Notes under the pieces: generated by a model
The model's input: only the letters and a program-made list of their open reading frames with translations
Told to the model about the DNA's origin: nothing
Database searches by the model: none
From: Macrostomum lignano
Lineage: Eukaryota
DNA: 63,226 bases
Direction of reading: 5' to 3'
Assembly: GCA_002269645.1 (NCBI GenBank)
Contig: NIVC01004041.1
Span: 1 to 63,226 of the forward strand
Shown here: positions 1,653 through 10,600 of the stretch, one piece after another
Layout of the letters: each line of letters starts with the position of its first letter
Numbering within the stretch: the first letter of the stretch is position 1
Translations under genes and position numbers: made by a program

Positions 1653-4600
1653 CTAGCCACTATTAGGTGAACTCATCATAGTCTCAAAGTCGGTCAGGCT
1701 GCTGCGAGGTACTCCGTGATGCAGAAGTCGGAATCTGCACATCCTGACTGACGCTCTAGGAGCTCCACTGCTTGCGAGGTGCTCTGGAAGGTCGGCGGGT
1801 TGAGGAGAGAAATTCTGGAATGACCCGCAATTCTAGCCAATCAGCGAGCAGCGGAGGCTAGATAGATAGCCAACCACAATTCCCTTTGGATCACGTCCCA
1901 GCCAGCCAATCAGCGAGCAGCGGGGGATAGAAAGATAGCCAACAACGATTCCCATTGATCTCGTCCCTTGGATCAGTGGGCAAGAGGGGTAGATACCCAA
2001 TAATCGCCCAGCCAGCCAATCAGTGCTGACCAAACTTTCACCTGCAGTTCCCACGGATCCTCCAGATCATCTCTACACTGTCGAGTCAGCTGTGGCCTCC
2101 GACAGCCACCGTTTTCACCGTTGGTCGCCATGGAAATGGCCTGGTCCTCAGCGATGGGATCCAGTCGCGAGGAGGAGGCACCCGGCGAAGCCGTTGCTGA
2201 AGCCGACGCTTCCCCCGTCGAGAATGTGGCGTTCAAAGTGCGACGATGATGCGACGCTGCGATGCCGCCGAAGATGCCGGCAGACATGGCTGCCATGGAC
2301 TTCACGGCGTTGTTGGACTGCTGCTTGCTAATGCACACGACTGTGGGGGTAGGGTTAGGGAAGGGTAGATAGAAAGCGGATAGAGAGCGGATAGAGAGCG
2401 GATAGAGAGCGGATAGAGAGCGGATAGAGAGCGGATAGAGAGCGGAAGAAGAGCGGAAAGAGAACGGATAGAGAGCGGATAGAGAGCGGATAGAGAGCGG
2501 ATAGAGAGCGGATAGAGAGCGGATAGAGAGCGGATAGAGAGCGGAAGAAGAACGGAAGAAGAGCGGAAGGAGAGCGAAAGAAGAGCGGAAGAAGAGCGGA
2601 AGGAGAGCGGAAGAAGAGCGGAAAGAGAACGGATAGAGAGCGGATAGAGAGCGGATAGAGAGCGGATAGAGAGCGGATAGAGAGTGGATAGAGAGCGGAT
2701 AGAGAGCGGATAGAGAGCGGATAGAGAGCGGAAGAAGAACGGAAGAAGAGCGGAAGGAGAGCGAAAGAAGAGCGGAAAGAGAGCGGAAGGAGAGCGGAAG
2801 AAGAGCGGAAGGAGAGCGAAAGAAGAGCGGAAGAAGAGCGGAAGAAGAGCGGAAAGAGAGCGGATAGAGAGCGGATAGAGAGCGGAAAGAGAGCGGATAG
2901 AGAGCGGATAGAGAGCGGAAGAAGAGCGGAAGAAGAGCGGAAGAAGAGCGGAAAGAGAACGGATAGAGAGCGGATAGAGAGCGGATAGAGAGCGCATAGA
3001 GAGCGGATAGAGAGCGGATAGAGAGCGGATAGAGAGCGGATAGAGAGCGGAAGAAGAGCGGAAGGAAAAGGCGGATACGAAGAAGGGAGGAGGAAGGAAG
3101 TGAAGCGAAAACAGAACGAGATTGACAGTGATTTAATAGAGCTGCGCTACACCACATGTAGACCAGCAGAAACTCTCCCAAATCCATTCTGATCCTCACA
3201 CTTTGGCTTGCAATTGGCAGTTTGTTCCTCGGTGGCTCCAAGTTCTCGGCAGAGCTCCTCCAGCATGATGGCGTGCTTCTGCGGACAGATAATTGATAAT
3301 TCAAAGTACACTGCACTACACTATTTCTCTGTTTTTTAAACACATTTTTAACGTATATGTACGCAGAAATTTCTCCCTCTACCCCAACTGATCGCTGATT
3401 GGCTGGGGCGTGATGAAATCTATAGGGTGGTGGCTGACTCTCTCTCTCGCAGTCACGTGACCCACCTCCTGCAAGTCGCGGTCATTCTCCAGAGATTCGC
3501 ACTTCATCTCCGATATTCTTCGGGCTCGCTTCTGCAGCTGGATGCGGAACTCGTCCCGCTGCTTCTCGTGCATCATCAGGCCTGTGGGCGGGGGGCTTTA
3601 TTGTACTTTTGTGTGGCCATAGAGAATAGGGACAGGGAAGACAGACAGACAGACAGACAGACACTAAGACAGACAGACAGACAGACAGACAGACAGACAG
3701 ACAGACAGACAGACAGACAGACAGACAGACAGACAGACAGACAGACAGACAGACAGACAGACAGACAGACAGACAGACAGACAGACAGACAGACAGACAG
3801 ACAGACAGACAGACAGACAGACAGACAGACAGACAGACAGACAGACAGACAGACAGACAGACAGACAGACAGACAGACTAAGACAGACACTAAGACAGAC
3901 ACACACACAGACAGACAGACAGACAGACACTAAGACAGACAGACAGACAGACAGACAGACAGACAGACAGACAGACAGACAGACAGACAGACAGACAGAC
4001 AGACAGACACTAAGACAGACAGACAAACAGAGAGACAGAGAAACCCTTACCATTAATCACCCTGACTATGCGCCACAGCAGGAACAGGACAATAACGGAC
4101 ACCTCCGAGGACTCGAGTTTGACGAACACGACGTCAGCTACGAAGGACACGGCGATAACGACCGCGTCCACAACCTGCGGTGTCGGGAGTGTACGGAGTG
4201 GAGGGAGGAATTAGAGAGGGAATTTAGGGATCAGTGTGAGGATTTGAAGTCAGGGTTTTGTGTCTAAAAAGATTAGGGATCACAGAAGGAGAGTAGGGAT
4301 CAGAGAGGGAGATTAGGGGTCAGAGAGGGAGATTAGGGGTCAGAGAGGGAGATTAGAGATCACAGAGGGAGATTAGAGATCGGAGAGGGAGATTAGGGAT
4401 CAGAGAGGGAGATTAGGGGTCAGAGAGGGAGATTAGGGGTCAGAGAGGGAGATTAGGGGTCAGAGAGGGAGATTATTGATCACAGAGGGAGATTAGAGAT
4501 CGGAGAGGGAGATTAGAGTTCAGAGAGGGAGATTAGGGTCAGAGAGGGAGATTAGGGGTCAGAGAGGGAGATTAGAGATCAGAGAGGGAGATTAGATACC

Positions 4601-7600: not shown

Positions 7601-10600
7601 CGTCTCTCCTCTCTCTTCTCTTCTCTCTCGTCTCTCCTCTCTTTTCTCTTATCTCTCTACTGTCCTCTCTCCTCTCTCCTCTCTCCTCTATCATATCTCC
7701 TCTCCTCTCTCCTCTCTCCTCTCTCCTCTCTCCTCTCTCCTCTCTCCCCTTTCGTCTCTCCTCTCTCTTCTCTTCTCTCTCGTCTCTCCTCTCTTTTCTC
7801 TTATCTCTCTACTGTCCTCTCTCCTCTCTCCTCTCTTCTCTCTCCTCTCTCATATCTCCTCTCTCATATCTCCTCTCTCATATCTCCTCTCTCATATCTC
7901 CTCTCTCTCATATCTCCTCTCTCATATCTCCTCTCTCATATCTCCTCTCTCATATCTCCTCTCTCATATCTCCTCTCTCATATCTCCTCTCTCATATCTT
8001 CTCTCTACTCTCCTCTTCTTTCATATCTCCTCTCTTCTCTCCTCTCTCCTCTCCTCTCTCCTCTCCTCTGTCTCTCTCTCTCTCTCTCTCTCCACTCTCC
8101 ACTCTCCTCTCCTCTCTCCTCTCTCATATCTCCTTTCTACTCTCCTCTCTCATATCTCCTCTCTCCTCTCTCCTCTCTCCTCTCTCATCTCTCCACTGTC
8201 CTCTCTCCTCTCTCCTCTCTCCTTTCTCCTCTCTCCTCTCTCATCTCTCCTCTCTCATCTCTCCTCTCTCCTCTCTCATATCTCCTCTCTCCTCTCTCAT
8301 ATCTCCTCTCTCCTCTCCTCTCTCCTCTCTCCTCTCTCCTCTCTTCTCTCTTCTCTCTCCTCTCTCATCTCTCCACTGTCCTCTCTCCTTTCTCCTCTCT
8401 CCTTTCTTCTCTCTCCTCTCTCCTCTCTCCTCTCTCCTCTCCTCTCTCCTCTCCTCTCTCCTCTCCTCTCTCCCTCTCCACTCTTCTCTCTCGTCTTCTC
8501 TTTCCCCTCCTCTACTCTATCCTTTGTACTCTCTTTTCTCTCCTCTTCTCTCTCATCTACCCCGCCATTTCGTACAAGATTCTGTTATCTCACATTGCAT
8601 TTATTAAAGTTCGCCGTGCACCACGTTAAGAATTATCACCAAAATAGCACCACCGCAAGCTGGTACAGAGAGCTACAAACACTCCTGCTAGGCTTTAAAA
8701 TGAGTCCAAGATAAGATATCAAACTACCGTACTTTTAGTAGACTTGTTTGCAAATGATTCAGTCTTTAACTTGCCTAAATTTAAATCATTTTATTGTTTT
8801 ACTTTATAACAAAAATACCTGCAAAATAAGGCAACGGTTTGAGAAAGATTATAGAGACATTTAGTGGGAGACGATTCTTGATGAGGGATTAGCCACTGTT
8901 GATAAGGGATTAGCGATTGTTGATAAGGGATTAGCCACTGTTGATAAGGGATTAGCGATTGTTGATAAGGGATTAGCGATTGTTGATGACGGATTAGCTA
9001 TTGTTGATGAGGGATTAGCGATTGTTGATGAGGGATTAGCTATTGTTGATGAGGGATTAGCTATTGTTGATGAGGGCTTAGCGATTGTTAATGATGGATT
9101 AGCGATTGTTGATGAGGGATTAGCGATTGTTGATGAGGGCTTAGCGATTGTTGATGACGGATTAGCGATTGTTGATGAGGGATTAGCGATTGTTAATGAT
9201 GGATTAGCGATTGTTGATGAGGGATTAGCGATTGTTGATGAGGGATTAGCGATTGTTAATGAGGGATTAGCGATTGTTGATGAGGGATTAGCTATTGTTG
9301 ATGAGGGATTAGCTATTGTTGATGAGGGCTTAGCGATTGTTAATGATGGATTAGCGATTTTTGATGAGGGATTAGCGACTGCTGATGAAGGATTAGTGAT
9401 TGTTGATGAGGGATTAGCGATTGTTGATGAGGGATTAGCGATTGTTGATGAGGGATTAGCGATTGTTAATGAGGGATTAGCGATTGTTGATGAGGGATTA
9501 GCTATTGTTGATGAGGGATTAGCTATTGTTGATGAGGGCTTAGCGATTGTTAATGATGGATTAGCGATTTTTGATGAGGGATTAGCGACTGCTGATGAAG
9601 GATTAGTGATTGTTGATGAGGGATTAGCGACTGCTGATGAAGGATTAGCGATTGTTGATGAAGGATTAGCGATTGTTGATGAGGGATTAGCGATTGTTGA
9701 TGAGGGATTAGCGATTGTTGAAAAGGGATTAGTGATTGTTGTTGATAGATTAGCAATGGCTTTTTGGGAATTAGCCAAGTATTGATTTGAATAAATTCAT
9801 TGGACTAAGAATTTAACATTAAAATATCTGTGGAACAATAACAAGGCATTATTCAGTGAACTTCCTTATAGAACAAAATTAGAGCATTGGAACAAAAGAC
9901 AAAAAAGTCAGCGAACTCACTATTCAAAGCCTTAATCTCCAAAATGATCTCAGCAATCACCAACACGGCATCGATGAGCACCAGTGCGCAGAGGACAATC
10001 TGGGCCGCGTTGGACCTGATGCACTGCAGCAGCTTCTGCTTCCAGCTGTAGGACAAGGGAGCACGTATACTTTTGGGGAGTTATTATTATAATTCAATCC
10101 ATAGACCAACCGGTAAGCTCCAATTATTAAAAAAAAATCCTGAAAGGTATAGACCACTATTGGAATCCCATTAGATCTTTATTAGAATGTCATTAGACCA
10201 TCATCAGAATCCCATTAGAATCTCATTAAATCATTATTCGAATATCATTAGACCATCATTAGAATCTCATTAGACCATCATTAGAATCTCATTAGACCAT
10301 CATTAGAATCTCATTAGACCATCATTAGAATTCCATCAGATCATTATTTAAATCCCATTAGATGTATATAATAGTCTCAATAGACCATTCCTAGAATCCC
10401 ATTGAATCATCATTAAGTCCCATTAGATGAACATTCGAGTCTTATTAGATAATCAATAAATCATTCCTAGAATCGAATCTATTTAGATTTTTGTTAGAAT
10501 TCAAATAGATCCAAATTATAATCCCATTAGATCTTTATTTGAATCCCATTAGATCATCATTAAAATGTGGTCAGATAACCACCAGCTCACTCACGTGGAT

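What the first reader, a model, noticed from the sequence alone, without database searches (positions are those of the whole stretch)
4051..10045. Hv proton channel that keeps the selectivity Asp but lacks the first S4 arginine (Hv3-like), apparently in a non-mollusc
Seen: S4 reads [14 protein letters not shown]. Aligned to human Hv1 LRLWRVARIING, R1 (R205) is Leu, while W207, R208, R211 and N214 equivalents are kept. S1 keeps the D112 equivalent (LVLIDAVL), S2 keeps F150/E153 (LFVSE), and S3 keeps D174/D185. Known: RxWRxxR is the Hv signature, and Aplysia californica Hv3 lacks the first S4 Arg and shows proton-selective leak with weak voltage dependence. Inference: this may be an Hv3-type proton leak channel in another lineage (probably a flatworm), by shared ancestry or convergence.
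Basis: partly seen in the sequence, partly recalled or inferred. Interest (0 to 1): 0.8.

Follow-up and report, generated by a model that had tools for sequence, protein, structure and literature searches.

The report
Flatworm proton channel lacking first S4 arginine
This stretch holds a flatworm gene for a voltage-sensor-type proton channel that naturally lacks the first of its three sensing arginines; it is a new member of an already described group of such channels in molluscs, worms and their relatives, and the assembled sequence carries a one-base gap that breaks the reading frame.

Summary
On the minus strand, exons at 9921-10045, 4853-5270 and 4051-4174 encode S1-S4 of an Hv-family voltage sensor. 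Its S4 reads [14 protein letters not shown], with Leu at human R205. D112, F150, E153, D174, D185, W207, R208, R211 and N214 equivalents are kept. The gene is larger than flagged: at least seven exons, 1973-10720. One added base restores a 451-aa ORF and the splice junction seen in a tapeworm ortholog.

The closest relatives are flatworm proteins (Macrostomum lignano, 77% core identity; also cestodes, trematodes, a monogenean). All lack R1 and have a ~100-270-aa S1-S2 loop. They group firmly with R1-less, proline-less channels of a nemertean, a brachiopod and a bryozoan. They group only weakly (bootstrap 48%) with the mollusc Hv3 (xPWRxxR) family.

The gene is not strict Hv3: it has no Pro206, keeps F150, and is 33% identical to AcHv3 against 37% to human Hv1. 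A 2023 review already describes proline-less large-loop Hv channels outside molluscs.

Verdict: new member of a known kind. It is probably a proton-selective channel with reduced gating charge and possible resting leak; this is untested.

The parts
10595..10720 (-). Exon N: cytoplasmic N-terminal exon ([41 protein letters not shown]). It has no start codon, so at least one further 5' exon remains unfound.
   Evidence: tblastn match to the Mesocestoides P0004 N-terminus (E 1.4e-6). AG acceptor and GTGAGT donor. Same exon in the Spirometra ortholog.
9921..10045 (-). Exon A: S1 helix (9934-10008) with the D112-equivalent Asp (LVLIDAVL) and the E119/E123/K125 equivalents.
4853..5270 (-). Exon B: most of the ~109-aa extracellular S1-S2 loop (three N-x-S/T sequons), S2 (4882-4956; H140, F150, E153, K157 equivalents) and the S2-S3 linker.
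4871..4878 (-). Homopolymer run GGGGGTTT (minus strand) with a one-base deficit. The frame shifts here: upstream reads ...KIVCLAGG, downstream must read FLRDRFE|GT to match homologs (NFVREKFE, RFLRLKFE) and the phase-0 splice into exon C.
   Evidence: Conserved phase-0 intron after ...KFE in the Spirometra locus L001.
4051..4174 (-). Exon C: S3 (4121-4174; D174 and D185 equivalents), a short S3-S4 loop, and S4 ([15 protein letters not shown]).
4079..4081 (-). CTG codon for the Leu that occupies the R1 (human R205) position.
   Evidence: Leu, Ile or Val occupies this column in all 70 R1-less family members, and Arg in all 52 canonical ones.
3466..3581 (-). Exon D: end of S4 (Gly) and the post-S4 helix / predicted coiled coil ([38 protein letters not shown]). 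It includes the 'FR' at 226-227 shared by all R1-less groups.
3200..3278 (-). Exon E: continuation of the C-terminal helix ([26 protein letters not shown]).
   Evidence: tblastn to cestode proteins (E 5e-4). Same exon boundaries in Spirometra. Splice sites.
1973..2340 (-). Exon F: conserved C-terminal motif [26 protein letters not shown] (2252-2329) and a tail running to a stop at 1973-1975. An alternative GT donor at about 2040 is possible, so the 3' end is not settled.
   Evidence: tblastn to trematode and cestode proteins (E 2e-5 to 4e-4)..
5271..9920 (-). Intron between S1 and the loop/S2 exon, almost entirely tandem repeats (7-mer x351, 21-mer x42, 7-mer GGATTAG x56).

Best explanation
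The region is part of a multi-exon gene on the minus strand, at least 1973-10720, in a macrostomid-like flatworm genome. It encodes a pore-less, voltage-sensor-only proton channel of the Hv family. The protein belongs to the spiralian 'unconventional' branch: no first S4 arginine, an S1-S2 loop of about 100 aa or more, and an extended C-terminus. Within that branch it sits in the proline-less subgroup found in flatworms, nemerteans, brachiopods and bryozoans, which is probably the sister of the mollusc-type Hv3 (xPWRxxR) family.

Shown:
- Homology, gene structure and residue content.
- Conservation of the R1-less S4 across Macrostomorpha, Monogenea, Trematoda and Cestoda.

Inferred mechanism:
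- Protons pass through the S1-S4 bundle, with selectivity set by the S1 Asp pairing with R2/R3.
- The post-S4 coiled coil dimerises the channel.
- Only two gating arginines remain per subunit, and the resting-state R1-D112/D185 salt bridges are absent. The channel should therefore move less gating charge, have a shallower gH-V relation, and probably leak protons at rest, as AcHv3 and human Hv1 R205W do.
- It keeps F150 and has no S4 proline, so its voltage dependence may be less degraded than in AcHv3.

The one-base frame break in the S2-S3 linker is most likely an assembly homopolymer error.
For: Family identity:
- Only Hv1 is hit in the PDB (E 1e-13).
- E 4.4e-73 to an M. lignano protein annotated 'Voltage-gated hydrogen channel 1'.
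- 1070 family hits in the exhaustive profile search.
- Four hydrophobic segments and no pore-domain exons.
- All proton-selectivity and charge-transfer residues are kept.

Placement:
- Flatworm clade, bootstrap 97. Window plus M. lignano, bootstrap 94.
- Flatworms plus the proline-less Tubulanus, Lingula and Bugula sequences, bootstrap 83, and 96-97% of quartets.
- All 70 R1-less sequences fall on one side of a bipartition, bootstrap 48.

Shared derived traits: no R1, loop >=90 aa, A/S/C at 215 and a hydrophobic residue at 226 co-occur in flatworm, other-spiralian and Hv3-type groups. None of 52 canonical channels has more than one of these.

Gene model:
- Seven exons, all with GT-AG introns.
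- One added base gives a 451-aa ORF.
- Intron positions are shared with the Spirometra ortholog, including the phase-0 intron after ...FE|VV.
- Exons downstream of the frameshift are the best conserved: 81-87% identity to M. lignano, with no stops.

Function:
- AcHv3 lacks R1, is proton-selective, leaks, and has about 60 mV/e-fold gH-V slope (PMC10911540).
- Human Hv1 R205W alone stays proton-selective, leaks in the closed state, moves 2.7 rather than 6.2 e0, and gives currents 'comparable to AcHv3' (PMC11853527).
Against: - No expression or electrophysiology data exist for any flatworm Hv.
- As assembled, the gene cannot encode S3-S4 in frame.
- The start codon exon was not found.
- The link to Hv3 is weak in sequence terms: bootstrap 48; flatworm cores score 3-22 bits higher on a canonical-Hv HMM than on an Hv3-type HMM; core identity is 33% to AcHv3 against 37% to human Hv1; both groups are long-branched, so attraction is possible.
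- The window protein differs from AcHv3 at Pro206 and F150. Either of these could contribute to AcHv3's phenotype.
- Leu is not Trp, so the R205W result may not transfer.
- The structure prediction was too poor to use (pLDDT 52).
Confidence: 0.7

Rival explanations
1. Convergence. The flatworm and proline-less spiralian channels lost R1 and gained a long S1-S2 loop independently of the mollusc-type Hv3 family, starting from a canonical Hv1.
For: - The joint clade has only 48% bootstrap.
- Flatworm cores score higher on the canonical HMM than on the Hv3 HMM.
- Core identity to AcHv3 (33%) is no higher than to human Hv1 (37%).
- Flatworms keep F150, Q102 and V109, as canonical channels do.
- Long loops also occur in some R1-bearing mollusc channels (Pecten, Octopus, Babylonia), so loop expansion is not unique.
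Against: - Four independent derived characters co-occur in all three R1-less groups, and no canonical sequence has more than one.
- All named carriers are spiralian.
- The NJ tree recovers one R1-less bipartition with no canonical intruder.
- The review's own scenario places the duplication in an early lophotrochozoan.
Confidence: 0.25
2. Pseudogene or null allele. The one-base deletion at 4871-4878 is real, so this copy makes a truncated S1-S2 protein and no channel.
For: As assembled, the ORF terminates 11 codons after the frameshift. No start-codon exon was found. The window's protein is absent from the protein collection.
Against: - It is the only lesion in about 1350 coding bases.
- It lies in a G5T3 homopolymer, a typical long-read error site.
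- All six introns are canonical.
- Downstream exons have no stops and are the most conserved parts (81-87% identity to M. lignano).
- All 27 invariant columns of the flatworm alignment are kept.
- The M. lignano model P0001 shows a similar local indel artefact, LLCAHCRV where P0002 reads LLWRIVRV.
Confidence: 0.12
3. Functionally ordinary Hv. Despite lacking R1, the channel gates steeply with voltage and does not leak, because F150 is intact and there is no S4 proline. On this view the AcHv3 phenotype comes from Pro206 and/or F150L rather than from R1 loss.
For: The window and all 11 flatworm sequences keep F150, while 0 of 55 Hv3-type sequences do. L206 is canonical. From my own recollection of the Hv1 literature, earlier R1-neutralising mutants still gate with voltage.
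Against: Human R205W alone reduces gating charge to 2.7 e0 and produces a closed-state leak (PMC11853527). Losing one of three charges must lower the limiting slope.
Confidence: 0.2
4. Non-conducting voltage sensor of the TMEM266 type. NCBI names some Lingula isoforms of the sister group 'transmembrane protein 266'.
For: The NCBI name on Lingula isoforms X6 and X7. A long C-terminus after a coiled coil is also a TMEM266 feature.
Against: - TMEM266 is vertebrate-restricted.
- It has three S4 Arg.
- It has non-polar V111 and M185 where Hv1 has D112 and D185 (PMC6392501).
- The window protein has Asp at both positions and two Arg.
- Asp112 is the residue that distinguishes Hv channels from C15orf27/TMEM266 (PMC10377628).
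Confidence: 0.04

Closest known systems
Proline-less 'unconventional' Hv channels of Spiralia. The review PMC10377628 describes large-loop Hv channels of Annelida, Bryozoa and Nemertea. Examples found here are Tubulanus XP_074660582, Lingula XP_013386068, Bugula KAF6030665 and Owenia CAH1787434.
   Same: - No R1 (L/I at 205) and no Pro at 206.
- S1-S2 gap of 94-148 aa.
- A/S at 215 and 'FR' at 226-227.
- Asp112, W207, R208, R211 and N214 are kept.
- They group with the flatworm clade at bootstrap 83 and in 96-97% of quartets.
   Different: - Core identity is 37-39%.
- Flatworms uniformly keep F150 and have C160, which the other spiralians mostly do not.
- None of these channels has been studied functionally.
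- The review does not list flatworms in this group.
Flatworm 'Voltage-gated hydrogen channel 1' predictions: M. lignano A0A1I8HS36 and A0A1I8F401, Hymenolepis CDS25535, Spirometra, Mesocestoides, Fasciola, Clonorchis, Schistosoma mekongi, Cichlidogyrus.
   Same: - Orthologs or paralogs of the window gene with the same S4 type; the S4 is identical in M. lignano.
- Same long loop, the same post-S4 [19 protein letters not shown], and the same C-terminal NAxKSxAA motif.
- Shared intron positions with Spirometra.
   Different: - The window is a distinct, unannotated sequence (77% core identity to M. lignano).
- Parasitic flatworms have lost E153 (C, T or Q), while the window and M. lignano keep it.
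- The monogenean sequence also lost W207.
AcHv3 (Aplysia californica, 980 aa; Chaves et al. 2022, PMC10911540) and the mollusc-type xPWRxxR Hv3 family.
   Same: - R1 is replaced by a hydrophobic residue.
- Very large S1-S2 loop and extended C-terminus after a coiled coil.
- Non-Gly at 215 and a hydrophobic residue at 226.
- The selectivity Asp is kept, and the family is spiralian only.
   Different: - No Pro before the Trp.
- F150 is kept here (Hv3-type: L or M in 55 of 55). Q102 and V109 are canonical here.
- The loop is 109 aa against 299 aa, and the C-terminus about 186 aa against 535 aa.
- Core identity is 33%. The phylogenetic link has only 48% bootstrap.
Canonical Hv1 (human HVCN1; PDB 5oqk, 3wkv).
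   Same: Four-helix voltage sensor without a pore domain. D112, F150, E153, D174, D185, W207, R208, R211 and N214 are shared, as is the post-S4 coiled coil. Core identity is 37%.
   Different: - R205 is Leu here.
- The S1-S2 loop is about 109 aa against about 14.
- There is no H193 equivalent.
- Position 226-227 reads FR rather than KK/RQ, and the C-terminus is longer.
Human Hv1 R205W somatic mutant (PMC11853527).
   Same: R1 is replaced by a hydrophobic residue in an otherwise canonical sensor with F150 and no Pro. This makes it the closest experimental proxy for the window protein's S4.
   Different: Trp rather than Leu, an engineered or somatic change rather than an evolved one, and no long loop.

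Membership tests
Hv voltage-gated proton channel family (criteria of Chaves et al. 2022, PMC10911540, Methods) | Four transmembrane segments S1-S4 and no pore domain. | tested here: met
   Four hydrophobic segments at residues 51-83, 183-219, 221-246 and 247-269. Both halves align to the Hv1 structures. The exons after S4 encode a helical, coiled-coil-like sequence, not S5-S6.
Hv voltage-gated proton channel family | Acidic selectivity-filter residue in S1 (human D112). | tested here: met
   Asp in LVLIDAVL aligns to D112.
Hv voltage-gated proton channel family | Conserved Trp in S4 (W207). | tested here: met
   LLWRIVR.
Hv voltage-gated proton channel family | At least two positive residues around the S4 Trp. 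| tested here: met
   R208 and R211 equivalents are present.
Hv voltage-gated proton channel family | Full RxWRxxR signature (three arginines). | tested here: not met
   Position 205 is Leu (CTG, 4079-4081), as in all flatworm homologs.
Hv voltage-gated proton channel family | Proton-selective conductance. | not testable with these tools
   This needs heterologous expression and a measurement of reversal potential against delta-pH.
Mollusc-type Hv3 (AcHv3; xPWRxxR) | First S4 arginine missing. | tested here: met
Mollusc-type Hv3 (AcHv3; xPWRxxR) | Proline directly N-terminal to the S4 Trp. | tested here: not met
   The window has Leu at 206. 98% of the Hv3-type sequences have Pro there.
Mollusc-type Hv3 (AcHv3; xPWRxxR) | [quoted passage not shown] | tested here: met
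   About 109 aa (block gap 111), against a median of 16 in canonical channels and 136 in Hv3-type.
Mollusc-type Hv3 (AcHv3; xPWRxxR) | Much enlarged intracellular domains. | tested here: inconclusive
   The C-terminus after S4 is about 186 aa if exon F reads to the stop at 1973. The 3' end and the 5' exon are not settled.
Mollusc-type Hv3 (AcHv3; xPWRxxR) | Phylogenetic placement inside or next to the Hv3 clade. | tested here: inconclusive
   It falls outside the xP clade (bootstrap 85) and is sister to it with only 48% bootstrap. HMM scores and identities do not favour Hv3.
Mollusc-type Hv3 (AcHv3; xPWRxxR) | Proton-selective leak with weak voltage dependence (about 60 mV/e-fold). | not testable with these tools
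   Inferred only from AcHv3 and hHv1 R205W.
Proline-less large-loop spiralian Hv channels (review PMC10377628, section 2.1.4) | Large S1-S2 loop, extended intracellular parts, and no S4 proline. In the sequences found here, R1 is also absent. | tested here: met
   Trait table. Clade with the Tubulanus, Lingula and Bugula sequences at bootstrap 83, and in 96-97% of quartets.
TMEM266 / C15orf27 | Non-polar residues at the D112 and D185 positions (V111, M185), three S4 Arg, and vertebrate-restricted distribution. | tested here: not met
   The window has Asp at both positions and two Arg, and it comes from a flatworm.

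The most novel reading that the evidence does not exclude
Flatworms as a phylum may have no canonical three-arginine Hv at all. Their two Hv paralogs would both be two-arginine sensors, fixed before the split of Macrostomorpha from the parasitic classes. Because these channels keep F150 and lack the Hv3 proline, they would be a natural 'pure R1 deletion'. If they prove to be constitutive or weakly voltage-dependent proton leak pathways, they would separate the contribution of R1 from that of Pro206 and F150L in the AcHv3 phenotype. 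They would also define a flatworm-specific channel type. In parasites it is further altered at E153, which may make it of pharmacological interest.
Probability: 0.3. Interest if true: 0.6.

Novelty: new member of a known kind. Interest (0 to 1): 0.4.

Why it matters
R1-less Hv channels challenge the RxWRxxR rule for proton-channel voltage sensing. Only one of them, AcHv3, has been recorded.

The flatworm type differs from canonical Hv1 in the sensor core essentially by R1-to-Leu alone. F150 and L206 are intact. It is therefore a clean natural test of what R1 contributes to gating charge and to sealing the resting state.

The same S4 is conserved from free-living macrostomids to schistosomes, liver flukes and tapeworms. 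Their databases label these proteins plain 'Hv1', so the annotation hides a sensor that is probably functionally distinct.

For this window specifically, the practical point is an unannotated ortholog and an assembly frameshift that would truncate any automatic gene model before S3-S4.

Tried and rejected
1. Pfam gave only a sub-threshold Ion_trans hit (E 0.0097, 15.6 bits against a cutoff of 25), so it was not useful for family assignment.
2. AlphaFold2 on the 8-sequence alignment gave pLDDT 52 and pTM 0.29. That is too poor for a fold search, so none was run.
3. I looked for a canonical splice that would join exon B to exon C in the assembled frame. No GT or GC donor lies in phase 0, and a micro-intron is impossible. 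I rejected this in favour of a one-base indel.
4. I tested whether the window core is specifically Hv3-like using family HMMs. It is not: canonical scores are 3-22 bits higher.
5. The quartet test of flatworm plus Hv3 against canonical pairs gave 66%, or 50% without the diagnostic columns. The design is biased because canonical pairs are close to each other, so I gave it little weight.
6. The 5' exon with the start codon was not found by homology, and there is no in-frame ATG upstream of exon N. A spliced-leader AUG joined at the exon N acceptor would be in the wrong frame; that reasoning rests on my own recollection.
7. The M. lignano genomic locus is not on record, so I could not compute dN/dS or compare the homopolymer site.
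8. The supplement of the AcHv3 paper is not held. AcHv3 was instead identified by its length, loop size and S4.
9. Three literature searches found no dedicated description of flatworm Hv channels beyond two sentences in the 2023 review.

Full report
**Observation**

The window is a repeat-dense eukaryotic locus, and the introns here are almost wholly minisatellites. On the minus strand, three exons whose ends coincide with the flagged coordinates encode a voltage-sensor domain.
- 9921-10045 encodes S1 (LVLIDAVL).
- 4853-5270 encodes a long loop plus S2 ([11 protein letters not shown]).
- 4051-4174 encodes S3-S4 ([16 protein letters not shown]...[13 protein letters not shown]).

A search of all PDB sequences hits only Hv1 (5oqk E 1.1e-13; 3wkv E 3.3e-13). 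That alignment puts Leu under R205, with W207, R208, R211 and N214 matched. In a 122-sequence core alignment the window keeps D112, E119, D/E123, H140, F150, E153, K157, E171, D174 and D185.

**Gene model**

tblastn with flatworm homologs finds further conserved exons.
- An N-terminal exon at 10595-10720 ([15 protein letters not shown]).
- The post-S4 helix at 3466-3581 and 3200-3278.
- A C-terminal exon at 1973-2340 carrying a motif shared by all flatworm paralogs ([26 protein letters not shown]).

All six introns are GT-AG. The start-codon exon was not found.

One point changes how the finding should be read. In the assembled sequence, exon B cannot be spliced in frame to exon C. The ORF runs ...[12 protein letters not shown] and stops 11 codons later, before S3-S4. 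The +1 frame across the end of exon B reads GFLRDRFE, followed by GTACGG. That matches NFVREKFE in M. lignano and RFLRLKFE in cestodes, and it gives a phase-0 donor that fits the phase-0 acceptor of exon C.

The shift lies in the run GGGGGTTT at 4871-4878. Adding one base gives a 451-aa ORF. The Spirometra ortholog, whose genomic locus I fetched as L001, has the same intron positions, including the phase-0 intron right after ...KFE|VV.

I read this as an assembly error with about 85% confidence, for four reasons.
- It is the only lesion in the coding sequence.
- It sits in a homopolymer.
- The exons downstream of it are the best-conserved parts of the gene (81-87% identity to M. lignano).
- One M. 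lignano gene model shows a comparable local indel artefact.

A real null allele cannot be excluded without reads.

**Relatives**

The word-indexed search returned seven proteins, all from flatworms (M. lignano, Spirometra, Sparganum, Mesocestoides, Hymenolepis). Six of the seven show an L-x-W-R-x-x-R S4; in the seventh, M. lignano P0001, this stretch reads LLCAHCRV, the local indel artefact noted above.

The exhaustive profile search found 1070 family members, and I classified the best 150. The top scorers are L[LIVM]WR, with no R1 and no Pro. Below them, xPWR (Hv3-type) and RLWR (canonical) sequences are interleaved.

Naming 30 of them gave the following.
- The R1-less, proline-less type occurs in cestodes and in trematodes (Fasciola, Clonorchis, Schistosoma mekongi, Heterobilharzia, Calicophoron).
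- It also occurs in a monogenean (Cichlidogyrus, which additionally has W207 changed to Leu).
- Outside flatworms it occurs in Tubulanus (nemertean), Lingula (brachiopod), Owenia (annelid) and Bugula (bryozoan).
- P0085 is the 980-aa Aplysia protein with a 301-aa block gap and LLPWR. This matches the published description of AcHv3.
- The best-scoring canonical channels are from deuterostomes. R1-bearing channels with long loops are from molluscs.

**Phylogeny and characters**

I built a neighbour-joining tree with 200 bootstraps on 125 core columns.
- Flatworm clade, bootstrap 97. It contains two paralog groups, and the window pairs with M. lignano at bootstrap 94.
- Flatworms plus the other proline-less spiralian channels, bootstrap 83.
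- xPWR clade, bootstrap 85.
- All 70 R1-less sequences together, with no canonical member, bootstrap only 48.

Independent checks on the last grouping were mixed. Family HMMs score flatworm cores 3-22 bits higher on the canonical profile than on the Hv3 profile. Core identity of the window to AcHv3 is 33%, against 37% to human Hv1. Both R1-less groups are long-branched.

Rare characters point the other way. Absence of R1, a loop of at least 90 aa, A/S/C at 215 and a hydrophobic residue at 226 co-occur as follows.

| Group | No R1 | Loop >=90 aa | A/S/C at 215 | Hydrophobic at 226 |
|---|---|---|---|---|
| Flatworm (11) | 11 | 11 | 9 | 11 |
| Other spiralian (4) | 4 | 4 | 3 | 4 |
| Hv3-type (55) | 55 | 55 | 55 | 53 |

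None of the 52 canonical sequences has more than one of these traits. Every named carrier is spiralian.

I therefore favour a single early-spiralian origin, at about 65-70%, which is also the review's scenario. Flatworms would belong to the proline-less branch rather than to Hv3 proper. They differ from Hv3 by Leu206 and by keeping F150 (flatworms 11 of 11; Hv3-type 0 of 55), Q102 and V109.

**TMEM266**

NCBI labels some Lingula isoforms 'transmembrane protein 266'. TMEM266 is vertebrate-restricted, has three S4 arginines, and has V111 and M185 at the D112 and D185 positions (PMC6392501). Asp112 is the residue that separates Hv channels from C15orf27. The window protein has both aspartates, so I rejected this reading.

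**Likely mechanism (inferred)**

The protein has a cytoplasmic N-terminus and an S1 with the selectivity Asp. Its ~109-aa extracellular loop carries three N-glycosylation sequons. S2 and S3 hold an intact charge-transfer centre, S4 has two arginines, and a post-S4 helix probably forms the dimerising coiled coil.

Without R1, the resting-state salt bridges to D112 and D185 are missing, and one of three gating charges is lost. Two experimental precedents bear on this.
- AcHv3 is proton-selective, leaks, and has about 60 mV/e-fold slope (PMC10911540).
- Human Hv1 R205W is an otherwise canonical sensor. It stays proton-selective, leaks in the closed state, moves 2.7 rather than 6.2 e0, and resembles AcHv3 (PMC11853527).

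I therefore expect a proton-selective channel with a shallow gH-V relation and some resting leak, at about 50% confidence. Gating may be less degraded than in AcHv3, because F150 is intact and there is no proline.

**Novelty**

The kind is known: AcHv3 was described in 2022, and the 2023 review notes proline-less large-loop channels in annelids, bryozoans and nemerteans and two Hv genes in flatworms. Flatworm homologs already sit in databases labelled 'Hv1'.

The following are not described in the literature I could search.
- The flatworm channels lack R1.
- Both flatworm paralogs lack it.
- They keep F150.

The review states that R1 is naturally substituted only in Hv3 channels.

The window gene is thus an unannotated new member of a known kind. 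Interest is moderate.

Noticed in passing
window 3639-4039, 4270-4763, 5281-5671, 6114-8558, 8872-9754, 10845-11662, 12923-13961, 16458-16869, 17354-19182, ~52100-52780: The density of minisatellites inside introns and intergenic DNA is very high. Examples are (AGAC)n at three separate places, a TCTCCTC 7-mer repeated 351 times, and several arrays of 20-22-mers. They produce many long spurious ORFs.
   Followed up: partly
window 37297-37731 (minus): An exon of a phosphatidylinositol-phosphate kinase gene (Pfam PIP5K, E 1.7e-25). This is a second, unrelated gene in the window.
   Followed up: partly
window 182-1114 (minus): A 310-aa ORF directly downstream of the Hv gene on the same strand. It looks coiled-coil-like, has CIICDQ...CHMC near its start, and has no Pfam hit. 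I did not resolve whether it is a separate gene or a further 3' exon of the Hv gene.
   Followed up: partly
window 53588-54229 (minus); 61267-62995 (both strands): GC-rich ORFs that look like retroelement fragments (for example '...[11 protein letters not shown]...' and 'VVILGDLNAVLRRSERS'). None has a Pfam hit at E<=0.01.
   Followed up: partly
window 2252-2329 (minus); P0009, P0010, P0013, P0015, P0017, P0018: A conserved hydrophobic, Gly-rich C-terminal motif, [ST]K[EQ]Q[ST]xNA[VL]KS[IM]AA[LM]xxGxxGGxxxA, preceded by CKP[KR]. It is shared by both flatworm Hv paralogs, and Lingula also has CKPK. Its function is unknown; it may be a membrane-associated helix.
   Followed up: partly
P0032 (Lineus longissimus XP_064634943): A nemertean protein carries the Pro-type S4 (LLPWRVIRIVNC). 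The 2023 review confines the S4 proline to molluscs, brachiopods and phoronids.
   Followed up: no
P0019 (Cichlidogyrus), P0028 and P0088 (Helobdella), P0105, P0109, P0114: Further natural S4 variants occur inside the R1-less branch. W207 is Leu in a monogenean (LLFLRVLR). R2 is Gln in a leech (LLWQIVR). R2 is Gly in some Hv3-type proteins (LPWGVIR). These may no longer be proton channels.
   Followed up: no
P0003, P0004, P0006-P0011, P0013, P0015 and P0016, against window 4882-4956: Parasitic flatworm Hv proteins have replaced the E153 equivalent in S2 by Cys, Thr or Gln. The free-living window species and M. lignano keep Glu.
   Followed up: partly
P0001 against P0002 (M. lignano): P0001 reads LLCAHCRVING where P0002 reads [11 protein letters not shown]. 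This looks like a pair of compensating indels in that assembly or gene model, and it would hide the S4 signature from motif searches.
   Followed up: no
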